Position numbers and translations under genes: made by a program. A stretch of 63,277 bases of DNA, counting the filler, from Octopus bimaculoides (Eukaryota), in assembly GCF_001194135.2 (NCBI RefSeq). It is 5 parts of 4 records of this genome, joined end to end, with 100 filler letters (N's around TTAATTAATTAA, not from the genome) between each part and the next. Parts side by side here need not be neighbours in the genome. Positions count along the whole stretch, not along the records: positions 33,791 to 58,354 come from NC_068996.1; 4 more parts are not named here. One strand, 5' to 3'. The notes below the pieces were generated by a model. The model saw only the letters and a program-made list of their open reading frames with translations, had not been told where the DNA came from and made no database searches. This document shows, piece by piece, positions 47,111-49,009 of the stretch (position 1 is the stretch's first letter; each line of letters starts with the position of its first letter).

Positions 47111-49009
47111 ATATGGAAGACTATACATGCAACAATCACTTCTTTCCTACCCTGGAGTGTCTATAAATTTTCAAGAGAAGCTTACAAGTCACATGATTTA
47201 GCTGTCATAGCATGTATTCTGGCAGCATTCTCTGTTCACTTATCTGTTTTCGGTACACACACACTAATTTCTACTTTTTTGTCCCCTTTTGTGTTTTTGT
47301 CATTATCAGTAATCTGGAGAACCCTTTGTTCTGATCTTCCTTGTTTCTATACAAAAAATACTATAAAAGTTAACAGAAATGGAACCGTAGATATTAGGGA
47401 GAATAGAAATATTTCCTGGAACAATGATGTTCTAAAGAGAATCTCAAAAAAAACTGATGCTGAGAAAATTTATAGAGATAAAAACAACACAGGAAATAAT
47501 AACACTATAATAGGAGTAATTGGAAAGCATCTCAGAAACTTTGGCACTGGAATTATGATTGGTATTCTTCTCTATATACGTATTGATCTGCTTGTTTTCT
47601 ATACAGCTATTTTTTGCCCAGTATTATCTTGGTATATTTCCAAGTGGAGATTGTTTTTTCAACAGTTTATAATCATTACTTTTGGTGTTCTCTTGGGAAT
47701 CGCTATAGGAGCAATTGATGATTATTATACATATGGTAAATTTTTTATAAGCCCTAAACAGTGGTTTCTGTTTAATGTCTTTTCAGATCATTCAAATATG
47801 TTTTTTGGTCAATTTGGCATTTCCTTTTACTTTATAAACATTGTATTACATAATGCTGCTGTGATTTTGATGCTAGTCTTAACATTCCTCACAATCTTGG
47901 TAATCAAAGTTAGAAAGTTTAAAATATCAAATCCCTTTGTGTATCACTGTACTTATACATCTTTATTTCTCAGTTCCTCTGCAATTATTGTATTATTCAC
48001 ATTCTCACTAAAAGGACACAAAGAAATGCGATTTTTGCATAATTTTGTTGTTCTTGTATTGATAGTCTACGCTAGTACACTGAAGACTATTTTGCACTGC
48101 ATATATTCCAAAGTAATATCAAAAACCACAAAAACCACAAAAACTACTTTAAATTCATCTCTGGTTTTCTTATTGTTGGTTTATGTTAAACACCAATGGA
48201 ATTTATTTCCAAGTGGAAAGTCCACAGCTGATTGGTCATATTCAGATAACTTTGAATCTGGAAATATAAATCAATGCTTATATTATGTTCACCTTGAAGA
48301 TGATGTAACAGGTGTCTTTTTAGATGAAAGTTTATACTTCAGCGGTGCTTATAGCCTTCTTCATAGAGATGTACCCTTCCTTCCTCTCATCCACATGGAA
48401 TTTTATGAATTCAGCAAAGAGTCTAGAATCCCTATAAAATATCAGTTTGAATGGTTAAAAGTTGATAACACTAATAAGCCTACAACCCACGTCAGTGCAT
48501 TATCTAACATATCTGATTATTTATCAGTGTATAATACTCCATATCTAATAAAGAAGCTTATGAAAAATAATGTTTATAATTATCTTATCGTTAAAAAATT
48601 CCAGAAATTTATTGATCTTGGTTTTAAGTTAGTTTTTCAATCAGGAATGATAAAAGTCTTGAAAAAAGTAAGCAATACAACATTGAAAAAAAACTTCAAG
48701 TATTTCTTGAATCCATTTTCTTCTATATCAGAAAATAATTTAACTCTTAACGATATTTTTCTTCATGAAGGTCATTTCTTGTATTCTTTAGGCCAGTATG
48801 AAAAAGCTGAGCAGCGGTTGTTAGCTGCGTTACAGTATGCACCCATAAGGGTGGCTACATACCAGCTGCTATTTAATATATACCAACATTTTGGTAAATT
48901 TAATGAGAGTAATCGCTACTGGAATGTTTGTGCTAAACTATTTGGAGAAGAGGAATGCAGGAAACCTGTAGAAATTGTTGATTTGCAAAAACTCCCCAGT
49001 AACAGATAG
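47111..49009 (+). CDS. Terminal coding exon (632 aa) of an ALG9/PIG-B-like GT22 mannosyltransferase with C-terminal TPR-like repeats; 5' exon(s) not located
   Basis: The 576-aa ORF extends in frame to 47111, directly after a polypyrimidine tract and acceptor (tttttttctctttgtag|ATA TGG AAG). Multiple hydrophobic segments and GT22-type motifs: FGTHTLISTF (cf. TRTLxN), GILLYIRIDL (cf. IRPT), IDDYYTYG..SPKQWFLFNV, KGHKEMRFL (48011-48034). TPR-like FLHEGHFLYSLGQYEKAEQRLLAALQYAP from 48752. Stop TAG at 49007-49009. Confidence 0.85.
   Translation: MWKTIHATITSFLPWSVYKFSREAYKSHDLAVIACILAAFSVHLSVFGTHTLISTFLSPFVFLSLSVIWRTLCSDLPCFYTKNTIKVNRNGTVDIRENRNISWNNDVLKRISKKTDAEKIYRDKNNTGNNNTIIGVIGKHLRNFGTGIMIGILLYIRIDLLVFYTAIFCPVLSWYISKWRLFFQQFIIITFGVLLGIAIGAIDDYYTYGKFFISPKQWFLFNVFSDHSNMFFGQFGISFYFINIVLHNAAVILMLVLTFLTILVIKVRKFKISNPFVYHCTYTSLFLSSSAIIVLFTFSLKGHKEMRFLHNFVVLVLIVYASTLKTILHCIYSKVISKTTKTTKTTLNSSLVFLLLVYVKHQWNLFPSGKSTADWSYSDNFESGNINQCLYYVHLEDDVTGVFLDESLYFSGAYSLLHRDVPFLPLIHMEFYEFSKESRIPIKYQFEWLKVDNTNKPTTHVSALSNISDYLSVYNTPYLIKKLMKNNVYNYLIVKKFQKFIDLGFKLVFQSGMIKVLKKVSNTTLKKNFKYFLNPFSSISENNLTLNDIFLHEGHFLYSLGQYEKAEQRLLAALQYAPIRVATYQLLFNIYQHFGKFNESNRYWNVCAKLFGEEECRKPVEIVDLQKLPSNR

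What the first reader, a model, noticed from the sequence alone, without database searches (positions are those of the whole stretch)
47111..49009. GT22 (ALG9/PIG-B-like) mannosyltransferase fused to TPR-like repeats
Seen: a multi-TM GT22-like region (HKEMRF motif), then a ~250-aa soluble region ending in two TPR-like helix pairs (48752 to about 48950). Known: human PIGB, PIGZ, ALG9 and ALG12 have no TPRs, whereas TMTC1-4 protein O-mannosyltransferases pair a different GT-C domain with TPRs that are thought to help recognise protein substrates. Inference: this may be an uncharacterised invertebrate GT22 paralog that modifies proteins or works through a partner, rather than acting in GPI or LLO synthesis.
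Basis: partly seen in the sequence, partly recalled or inferred. Interest (0 to 1): 0.75.

Follow-up and report, generated by a model that had tools for sequence, protein, structure and literature searches.

The report
Uncharacterised invertebrate GT22 mannosyltransferase with TPR tail
This is the last exon of an octopus gene for a membrane sugar-transferring enzyme from a previously undescribed branch of a known family; the branch occurs in molluscs, some other invertebrates and amphioxus, carries an unusual two-repeat TPR tail, and has its nearest relatives found in Asgard archaea, not the known animal enzymes.

Summary
Window 47111-49009 (+) is the intact last exon (632 codons, AG acceptor, TAG stop) of Octopus bimaculoides LOC106876918. 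It encodes most of a GT22 (ALG9-like) membrane domain with HKEMRF, then a roughly 180-aa alpha/beta domain, then two canonical 34-residue TPR motifs (48749-48952).

- The "250-aa soluble region" is mostly the PIGB-type C-terminal domain, which I infer to be lumenal. Only the TPR pair is new.
- The protein is not a PIGB orthologue. It belongs to a family of about 130 clusters in Mollusca, Nemertea, Priapulida, Arthropoda and amphioxus, all unnamed, often with several copies per genome. No vertebrate or insect was among the named members.
- The nearest relatives found outside the family are Asgard archaeal GT22 proteins without TPRs (hhalign E 1e-53, against 1e-9 for vertebrate PIGB).

Two TPRs are too few to support a TMTC-like protein-substrate role. 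Most likely this is an ER Dol-P-Man-dependent mannosyltransferase with an unknown acceptor, probably lipid-linked.

The NCBI gene model lacks exon 1, which holds the catalytic HPDE motif. I could not check for separate octopus PIGB and PIGZ genes. No paper describing the family was found.

The parts
33791..47110 (+). 3' part of intron 2 of the gene. The whole intron is about 19.3 kb, and exon 2 lies outside the piece.
   Evidence: tblastn with P0001 and its homologues finds no upstream exon in 33791-47110. In the public contig, exon 2 lies 19.26 kb upstream of this exon. The intron holds a Tc1/mariner DDE_3 fragment at 44828-45412 and microsatellites.
47096..47110 (+). Polypyrimidine tract and AG splice acceptor
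   Evidence: The sequence reads tttttctctttgtag|ATATGG. The exon boundary sits at the same protein position in amphioxus and chiton.
47111..49009 (+). Last (third) coding exon of LOC106876918: 632 codons plus the TAG stop
   Evidence: Open frame. 100% identical to P0001 residues 52-683.
47111..48190 (+). Transmembrane GT22 (GT-C) region, from about TM3 to the last TM helix (P0001 aa 52-411)
   Evidence: Pfam PF03901 E 5e-17. Modelled helices reach aa 416. Foldseek matches ALG12 9s6t and ALG9 9s6u.
47330..47503 (+). Disordered, Asn/Lys-rich loop (aa 125-182) at a site that is hypervariable across the family
   Evidence: pLDDT is below 50 for aa 129-182. The alignment has long gapped columns here.
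48017..48034 (+). HKEMRF motif. Arg358 (48029-48031) is predicted to bind the phosphate of Dol-P-Man.
   Evidence: H, K, E and R are invariant across the family. The motif aligns to HKELRF of ALG12, whose R312 coordinates the donor phosphate (alignment with a constant +6 chain offset; PMC13503287).
48191..48745 (+). C-terminal alpha/beta domain (aa 412-596), of the PIGB/Asgard type and inferred to be lumenal
   Evidence: The model shows mixed helix and strand, pLDDT about 80-90. It is homologous to the C-terminal domain of Asgard GT22 proteins (hhalign E 1e-53, alignment runs to the end of this domain) and to the 'MPCHSTP' region of PIGB. Foldseek found no PDB match for this part.
48737..48745 (+). 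N-L-T glycosylation sequon just before TPR1
   Evidence: A sequon is present at this spot in 19 of 22 family members, which argues for lumenal exposure.
48749..48850 (+). TPR motif 1 (aa 598-631), with G8, A20, A27 and P32
   Evidence: Helices 597-610 and 614-625 in the model. TPR_2 E 0.079. Family profile against TPR proteins. Rmsd 1.2-1.6 A to solved TPRs.
48851..48952 (+). TPR motif 2 (aa 632-665), followed by a short capping helix
   Evidence: Helices 632-645 and 648-662, then 664-668. Exact 34-residue register with motif 1, read by eye.
48929..48958 (+). Conserved cysteine pair, Cys658 and Cys667 (possible disulfide)
   Evidence: Cys is present in 20 of 20 and 20 of 22 aligned members.
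49019..49024 (+). AATAAA polyadenylation signal, 10 nt after the stop codon

Best explanation
This is the terminal exon of a real, intact octopus gene. The gene belongs to a distinct, uncharacterised GT22 lineage found across bilaterians, with three parts: an 11-TM GT-C(A) mannosyltransferase module, a PIGB-type alpha/beta domain, and a family-specific C-terminal pair of TPR motifs.

Shown here:
- The GT22 fold and motifs.
- Conservation of the full architecture in about 130 sequence clusters from molluscs, a nemertean, a priapulid, a centipede, scorpions and amphioxus.
- A conserved three-exon gene structure.
- Clear separation from PIGB.
- Nearest relatives found in Asgard archaea, which lack the TPRs.

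Inferred mechanism (by homology to ALG9 and ALG12):
- The enzyme sits in the ER membrane with its C-terminal domains in the lumen.
- It takes mannose from dolichyl-phosphate-mannose. The Arg of HKEMRF holds the donor phosphate. The Asp of the HPDE motif in lumenal loop 1, encoded by the missing exon 1, acts as catalytic base.
- It transfers the mannose with inversion, giving an alpha linkage.

The acceptor is unknown. I judge a lipid-linked glycan (a GPI side branch or a dolichol-linked oligosaccharide variant) more likely than a protein. The alpha/beta domain would help to select the acceptor glycan. The two TPRs would serve as a cap or as a docking site for a lumenal partner.
For: Gene and exon.

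GT22 membership:
- Pfam 62.6 to 73.6 bits against a cut-off of 23.8.
- Foldseek matches to ALG12 and ALG9, E 4e-6 and 1.6e-5.
- HKE.R is invariant across the family, and HPDE is present in all full-length members.
- ALG9 D82 and ALG12 R312 map onto these two motifs (PMC13503287).

Family:
- The exhaustive profile search gives 142 representatives at E<=1e-30, of which about 130 carry both the alpha/beta domain and the TPR pair.
- Named members come from five phyla and are all 'uncharacterized' or generically 'Mannosyltransferase'.
- Haliotis, Mytilus and Littorina each have more than one copy.
- The three-exon structure is shared by amphioxus, chiton and octopus.

Not PIGB.

Asgard relatives.

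Lumenal C-terminus:
- ALG9 and ALG12 have 7+4 TM helices with the C-terminal domain in the ER lumen (PMC13503287).
- The GT22 topology model says the same (PMC6801728).
- A conserved sequon (19 of 22 members) and a conserved Cys pair.

TPR.
Against: - No activity, localisation or expression data exist.
- Exon 1, with the catalytic Asp, was not found for octopus. About 6 kb of the upstream sequence held is partly masked, so an intact octopus enzyme is inferred from orthologues.
- I could not show that octopus has separate PIGB and PIGZ genes.
- The tree is a crude neighbour-joining tree with one partial ALG9 outgroup, near-saturated distances and only vertebrate PIGB.
- The preference for a lipid-linked acceptor rests on family precedent, not on any feature seen here.
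Confidence: 0.72

Rival explanations
1. One reading: a protein-directed (TMTC-like) mannosyltransferase. The lumenal TPRs would recruit protein substrates, and the GT22 module would mannosylate them instead of a lipid-linked glycan.
For: The TPRs are real, conserved and very probably lumenal. TMTC1-4 and many bacterial GT-C enzymes combine a GT-C module with TPRs (PMC6801728). The family is highly diverged from the four lipid-acting GT22 subfamilies. The PIGB 'MPCHSTP' motif is replaced.
Against: There are only two TPR motifs, which from general knowledge is fewer than the three or more that usually form a peptide-binding groove, and far fewer than in TMTC. The TPR-less Asgard proteins and PIGB share the rest of the lumenal domain. 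No characterised GT22 enzyme acts on a protein. In ALG12 the C-terminal lumenal domain binds the acceptor glycan (PMC13503287).
Confidence: 0.15
2. It is simply the lineage's PIGB or PIGZ orthologue (GPI mannosyltransferase III or IV) that diverged quickly and gained a TPR tail.
For: It shares the PIGB-type architecture, including the C-terminal domain. Its loop-1 motif HPDE.FQS.EVAH resembles the PIGB and PIGZ motifs. One Mytilus member is labelled 'PIGB' by its depositor. PIGZ is not present in all organisms (PMC6056205), so a functional substitute is conceivable.
Against: - 18-21% identity to PIGB, even for the amphioxus copy, while shark and human PIGB are 62-65% identical.
- The family profile scores PIGB at 24-38 bits, against 120-158 bits for the Asgard proteins.
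- No canonical eukaryotic GT22 protein was identified among the family profile's top 150 hits across 1.84 billion representatives, although the library holds the same genomes (not every hit was identified).
- Several copies per genome.
- 0% bootstrap support for family+PIGB.
Confidence: 0.06
3. The gene is a relic: a non-catalytic or decaying copy, or a misassembled or contaminant sequence of archaeal origin.
For: The gene model lacks the catalytic exon 1. The closest outside relatives are archaeal. The gene is intron-poor, with 632 codons in one exon.
Against: The 632-codon frame is open and every family-invariant residue is kept. The gene lies on a 57.5-Mb chromosome scaffold among octopus repeats and transposon fragments. 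Intron positions are shared with chiton and amphioxus. The protein is only about 24% identical to the Asgard proteins, so it cannot be recent contamination.
Confidence: 0.05

Closest known systems
PIGB / Gpi10 (GPI mannosyltransferase III, GT22)
   Same: The same overall architecture: a GT22 membrane module with an acidic loop-1 motif (..PDE..QSLEV.H) and HKE.RF, followed by a C-terminal alpha/beta domain. The family's 'DVTGVFLD.S.HMTGGYSVLH' aligns to PIGB's 'SVF.LMPCHSTPFYSHVH'.
   Different: Only about 18-21% identical. The MPCHSTP motif is not conserved. The family adds two TPR motifs and a Cys pair at the C-terminus and a hypervariable disordered loop. It has several copies per genome. 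No vertebrate or insect was among the named members.
Asgard archaeal GT22 proteins (Heimdallarchaeota, Hodarchaeota, Hermodarchaeota and Promethearchaeota MAGs; uncharacterised)
   Same: These are the nearest relatives found: hhalign probability 100%, E 1.3e-53, 442 aligned columns that cover the membrane module and the whole alpha/beta domain. They share the HPDE.FQSLE, HKE.RF, 'GGYTYLHK' and 'YNY[LV]I' motifs.
   Different: They have no TPR pair and are 550-580 aa long. They are prokaryotic genes without introns, in dense gene neighbourhoods. Their acceptor must differ from eukaryotic GPI.
ALG9 and ALG12 (GT22; structures 9s6s, 9s6u, 9s6t)
   Same: They give the best structural matches to the model. 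They share the GT-CA fold with 7+4 TM helices and a lumenal C-terminal domain, the catalytic acidic residue in loop 1, and the donor-phosphate Arg in HKE.RF (PMC13503287).
   Different: Sequence similarity is confined to the membrane module (31-55 bits). Their C-terminal lumenal domains are not detectably homologous to this one, and they have no TPR.
TMTC1-4 (GT105 protein O-mannosyltransferases with TPRs)
   Same: A Dol-P-Man-type GT-C membrane module joined to TPR repeats at the C-terminus, which are lumenal from general knowledge.
   Different: A different GT-C family (GT105, not GT22; PMC6801728). From general knowledge, TMTCs carry long TPR arrays, against two repeats here. Weak PMT/PMT_2 Pfam hits in a few members are all below their curated cut-offs.

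Membership tests
GT22 (Pfam PF03901, ALG9-like mannosyltransferases) | Profile match above the curated threshold | tested here: met
   62.6 bits for the exon and 73.6 bits for P0001, against a cut-off of 23.8. 22 of 24 family members match.
GT22 (Pfam PF03901, ALG9-like mannosyltransferases) | GT-C(A) multi-helix membrane fold like the solved GT22 structures | tested here: met
   The AlphaFold model (pTM 0.74) matches ALG12 9s6t (E 4e-6, TM 0.61 normalised to the target) and ALG9 9s6u (E 1.6e-5) in Foldseek.
GT22 (Pfam PF03901, ALG9-like mannosyltransferases) | HKE.RF motif with the donor-phosphate Arg (ALG12 R312) | tested here: met
   HKEMRF at 48017-48034. H, K, E and R are invariant in the family.
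GT22 (Pfam PF03901, ALG9-like mannosyltransferases) | Catalytic acidic residue in the first lumenal loop (ALG9 D82) | tested here: inconclusive
   HPDE is present in every full-length orthologue. In octopus it lies in exon 1, which is outside the window and was not found in the 6 kb of partly masked upstream sequence held.
GT22 (Pfam PF03901, ALG9-like mannosyltransferases) | Dol-P-Man-dependent alpha-mannosyl transfer | not testable with these tools
   Needs a biochemical assay.
PIGB orthologue group | Groups with PIGB, with orthologue-level similarity | tested here: not met
   hhalign E 1.3e-9 at 18% identity. Amphioxus member versus chimpanzee PIGB, 21% identity. PIGB scores 24-38 bits on the family HMM. 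0% bootstrap for family+PIGB, and 90% for family plus Asgard-like proteins excluding PIGB.
PIGB orthologue group | Conserved C-terminal 'MPCHSTP' motif | tested here: not met
   M, P, C, H, S and P of this motif are invariant in 12 vertebrate PIGBs. The aligned family segment reads D.S.HM[TS]GGY.
PIGB orthologue group | It is the only PIGB-like gene in the genome (no separate canonical PIGB) | not tested
   No tool searches the octopus genome. The PIGB search listed only its best 120 hits, all named ones vertebrate.
PIGZ orthologue group | Groups with PIGZ | tested here: inconclusive
No canonical eukaryotic GT22 was identified among the family profile's top 150 hits, though not every hit was identified.
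TPR repeat | Pfam TPR model above the gathering threshold in this protein | tested here: not met
   TPR_2 13.6 bits against 27, and TPR_19 11.9 bits against 25.
TPR repeat | 34-residue helix-turn-helix repeats with the TPR signature and fold | tested here: met
   Two exact 34-residue units, the first with G8, A20, A27 and P32 (read by eye from the sequence). The family profile hits only TPR proteins in the PDB, with E values of 1e-4 or better. Rmsd 1.2-1.6 A to solved TPRs.
TPR repeat | Array of three or more repeats forming a ligand-binding groove | tested here: not met
   Only two repeats plus a short capping helix.
TMTC-type protein O-mannosyltransferase (GT105) | GT105-type membrane module | tested here: not met
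   The membrane module is GT22. PMT and PMT_2 hits in a few family members are all below their curated cut-offs.

The most novel reading that the evidence does not exclude
The family catalyses an ER-lumenal mannosylation that is none of the four known GT22 reactions. It could act on proteins or on a glycolipid or GPI side chain specific to these invertebrates. The TPR pair would recruit the substrate or a partner. The lineage would descend directly from an Asgard-type GT22, either as a relic of early eukaryotes lost in vertebrates and insects or as an ancient transfer into bilaterians.
Probability: 0.25. Interest if true: 0.85.

Novelty: new variant of a known kind. Interest (0 to 1): 0.6.

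Why it matters
Animal GT22 enzymes are treated as a closed set of four: ALG9, ALG12, PIGB and PIGZ (PMC6801728). This work points to a fifth lineage, conserved from molluscs to amphioxus, with its own domain architecture and no known function. That would mean an unrecognised mannosylation step in the secretory pathway of many marine invertebrates.

Its strong similarity to Asgard archaeal GT22 proteins also bears on how the lumenal, dolichol-dependent glycosylation enzymes of eukaryotes arose. For annotation, the family should not be called PIGB, as one Mytilus entry does, and the octopus gene model needs its first exon.

Tried and rejected
- Searched for upstream exons inside the window piece with tblastn. 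None were found; the intron is longer than the piece.
- Searched for exon 1 (HPDE) in the 10 kb upstream of exon 2 on the public contig. It was not found, and part of that stretch is masked with N.
- A second word-indexed homologue search with the family profile added only more molluscs. It was superseded by the exhaustive search.
- A PIGB search meant to retrieve an octopus or other invertebrate PIGB listed only its best 120 hits, all named ones vertebrate. Coexistence with canonical PIGB therefore stays unverified.
- Foldseek of the C-terminal domain alone gave no PDB match for the alpha/beta part, only TPR hits.
- Papers: no description of a GT22-TPR family or of Asgard GT22 proteins was found. 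The snail CAZyme paper reports only '4 GT22'. PMC6056205 has no supplementary alignments held as text.
- Contamination or a recent archaeal origin was rejected because of the shared introns, the chromosomal context and only about 24% identity to the Asgard proteins.
- The two groups that fall between the family and the named Asgard proteins (P0141/P0162, and P0144/P0145/P0149) sit on short MAG or metagenome contigs with uninterrupted ORFs. Their organisms stay unidentified.
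Full report
**What is at the coordinates**

The piece comes from Octopus bimaculoides chromosome CM046616.1.
- Position 47111 is the first base after a textbook splice acceptor (tttttctctttgtag|ATATGG).
- The frame runs open for 632 codons to TAG at 49007-49009, with AATAAA at 49019.
- The translation equals residues 52-683 of NCBI 'uncharacterized protein LOC106876918' (P0001).
- No earlier exon lies in the piece. On the public contig, exon 2 sits 19.3 kb upstream.
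- The annotated start Met is internal to exon 2. The frame continues upstream of it as VVHSEIYGYGFRPYEY|MPPN... back to an AG acceptor.
- The amphioxus and chiton orthologues have exactly three coding exons with the same boundaries. Exon 1 ends just after HPDE.FQS.E, exon 2 codes about 70 aa, and exon 3 codes about 600 aa.
- The octopus model therefore lacks exon 1, which carries the start codon, TM1 and the catalytic loop motif. I did not find it in the roughly 6 kb of partly N-masked upstream sequence held.

**Checking the observation**

The GT22 call is solid.
- Pfam PF03901 matches at E 5e-17, 62.6 bits against a cut-off of 23.8.
- The only PDB sequence hit for the membrane part is ALG9.
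- An AlphaFold model built from a 24-sequence family alignment (pLDDT 75.7, pTM 0.74) matches the 2026 cryo-EM structures of ALG12 and ALG9 best (Foldseek E 4e-6 and 1.6e-5).
- HKEMRF lies at 48017-48034.

The TPR call is sub-threshold on the octopus sequence alone (TPR_2 E 0.079), but it holds at family and fold level.
- Five of 24 members reach TPR_2 with E values down to 8e-5.
- A profile of the C-terminal domain hits nothing in the PDB except TPR proteins: PilF 8.6e-5, LapB 2e-4, APC7 2.6e-4, and designed consensus TPRs with much lower E values.
- The four terminal helices (pLDDT 86-98) superpose on solved TPRs at 1.2-1.6 A over 65-70 residues.
- Read by eye, aa 598-631 and 632-665 are two exact 34-residue units. 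The first carries G8, A20, A27 and P32.

**What the soluble region really is**

It has two parts.
- Residues about 412-596 fold as a mixed alpha/beta domain. This part has no structural match in the PDB.
- It is nevertheless not new. Profile-profile comparison aligns it to the C-terminal domain of vertebrate PIGB, with the family's 'DVTGVFLD.S.HMTGGYSVLH' opposite PIGB's 'SVF.LMPCHSTPFYSHVH'.
- It also aligns, over its whole length, to a group of archaeal GT22 proteins.
- Only the last 70 or so residues, the TPR pair followed by a conserved Cys pair, are specific to this family.

**The family**

- An exhaustive profile search of 1.84 billion representative proteins gave 2512 hits at E<=1e-3 and 142 at E<=1e-30.
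- About 130 of the representatives listed carry the alpha/beta domain plus the TPR pair.
- Named members come from these groups:
  - Mollusca: Octopus, Liolophura, Haliotis, Patella, Gigantopelta, Littorina, Lymnaea, Bulinus, Elysia, Pinctada, Mytilus, Mya, Mactra, Tegillarca and Sinanodonta.
  - Nemertea: Tubulanus.
  - Priapulida: Priapulus.
  - Arthropoda: Strigamia and Centruroides.
  - Cephalochordata: Branchiostoma.
- All are labelled 'uncharacterized', 'hypothetical' or generically 'Mannosyltransferase'. One Mytilus fragment is labelled PIGB.
- Haliotis asinina, Mytilus trossulus and Littorina saxatilis each have at least two diverged copies.
- No vertebrate or insect appeared among the named members.
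- I found no paper describing the family.

**Relationship to known GT22 enzymes**

- The next-best hits after the family (E 1e-30 to 1e-45) are 550-640-aa proteins with HPDE.FQSLE, HKE.RF and the alpha/beta domain but no TPR.
- A scan of prokaryotic genomes assigns the best matches to this group to Asgard archaea: Heimdallarchaeota, Hodarchaeota, Hermodarchaeota and Promethearchaeota MAGs. Weaker matches are bacterial.
- One of these proteins sits in a dense prokaryotic gene neighbourhood with UvrB, UvrC and an Arf-like GTPase.
- hhalign results:
  - Family versus Asgard: probability 100%, E 1.3e-53, 442 columns.
  - Vertebrate PIGB versus Asgard: E 5.7e-28.
  - Family versus PIGB: 96%, E 1.3e-9, 18% identity.
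- Bit scores on the family HMM: family 413-798, Asgard 120-158, partial ALG9 51, PIGB 24-38.
- The amphioxus member is 21% identical to chimpanzee PIGB, while shark and human PIGB are 62-65% identical.
- In a neighbour-joining tree rooted on partial human ALG9, the family is monophyletic (84% bootstrap). It groups with the Asgard-like proteins to the exclusion of PIGB (90%). Family+PIGB had 0% support. The tree is crude, with near-saturated distances and no PIGZ or ALG12.
All later work used the database sequences.
I count that as weak evidence.

**Mechanism**

This section rests on PMC13503287.
- ALG9 and ALG12 are GT-CA enzymes with a conserved seven-TM module, four further TM helices, and a C-terminal domain in the ER lumen.
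- The catalytic base (ALG9 D82) sits in the first helix of lumenal loop 1.
- ALG12 R312 coordinates the Dol-P-Man phosphate.
- The C-terminal lumenal domain of ALG12 helps to form the pocket for the acceptor glycan.
- With a constant +6 chain offset, the alignments place D82 on the Asp of HPDE and R312 on the Arg of HKE.RF.

For this family, a lumenal C-terminus is also supported by an N-x-S/T sequon just before TPR1 in 19 of 22 members, and by a Cys pair conserved in 20 of 20 and 20 of 22 members.

From this I infer an inverting, Dol-P-Man-dependent alpha-mannosyltransferase of the ER. Its alpha/beta domain would help to select the acceptor, and its TPR pair would be a cap or a docking site.

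**The acceptor**

- Every characterised GT22 enzyme acts on a lipid-linked glycan.
- The TPR-less relatives share the rest of the lumenal domain.
- Two TPRs are fewer than the arrays that bind peptides in TMTC or OGT.
- I therefore rate a lipid-linked acceptor, distinct from the four known reactions, as more likely than a protein.

**Origin**

The shared intron positions in chordates and molluscs show that the gene was in the bilaterian ancestor. It could be a relic of an early eukaryotic, Asgard-derived GT22, or an ancient transfer. The intron-poor structure fits either view, and the question is unresolved.

**Verdict**

This is a new variant of a known kind: a fifth animal GT22 lineage with a PIGB-type domain plus a TPR pair, of unknown function.

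Noticed in passing
L001 9952-10168 (public contig; outside the window piece): The NCBI gene model for LOC106876918 starts at a Met inside exon 2. The reading frame continues upstream (VVHSEIYGYGFRPYEY) to an AG acceptor, so a first exon with the start codon, TM1 and the catalytic HPDE motif is missing from the annotation.
   Followed up: partly
L004-L025 (Asgard archaeal MAG contigs); L002/L003 10001-11686: Heimdall-, Hod-, Hermod- and Promethearchaeota genomes encode 550-580-aa GT22 proteins with the PIGB-type C-terminal domain. They are more similar to the animal family (E 1e-53) than vertebrate PIGB is (E 1e-9), and they are also clearly related to PIGB itself (E 6e-28). One lies next to an Arf-like GTPase gene and near UvrB and UvrC.
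   Followed up: partly
L042 (Branchiostoma) and L043 (Liolophura): The amphioxus and chiton orthologues share an identical three-exon coding structure, with about 600 codons in the last exon. This is unusually intron-poor for an old animal gene.
   Followed up: yes
window 44828-45412 (+) and 49933-50394 (-): Decayed Tc1/mariner transposon fragments flank the exon: a DDE_3 transposase core (E 4e-11) inside intron 2, and a Mos1-type HTH_48 fragment (E 1e-6) about 0.9 kb downstream of the stop codon.
   Followed up: yes
window 45719-46158, 46781-46874, 50906-51062, 51428-51538: Long microsatellites, (TGTA)n of about 108 copies, (AC)n, (ATAC)n/(TA)n and (AT)n, produce the spurious 'CMYVCMYV' and 'TYIHTYIH' ORFs around the exon.
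   Followed up: yes
window 47330-47503 (aa 125-182): A disordered Asn/Lys-rich loop carrying four N-x-S/T sequons sits at a site where family members have insertions of very different length. Its side of the membrane and its role are unknown.
   Followed up: no
P0141/P0162 and P0144/P0145/P0149/P0166 (L044, L045): Two further groups of TPR-less GT22 proteins score between the animal family and the named Asgard proteins. They sit on short MAG or metagenome contigs as uninterrupted ORFs, and their organisms were not identified.
   Followed up: partly
window 39863-40582 and 41986-42395: Runs of N lie inside the intron part of the piece. The matching stretches of the public contig copy (L001 22166-22885 and 24289-24698) are also N, so nothing can be said about those stretches.
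   Followed up: no
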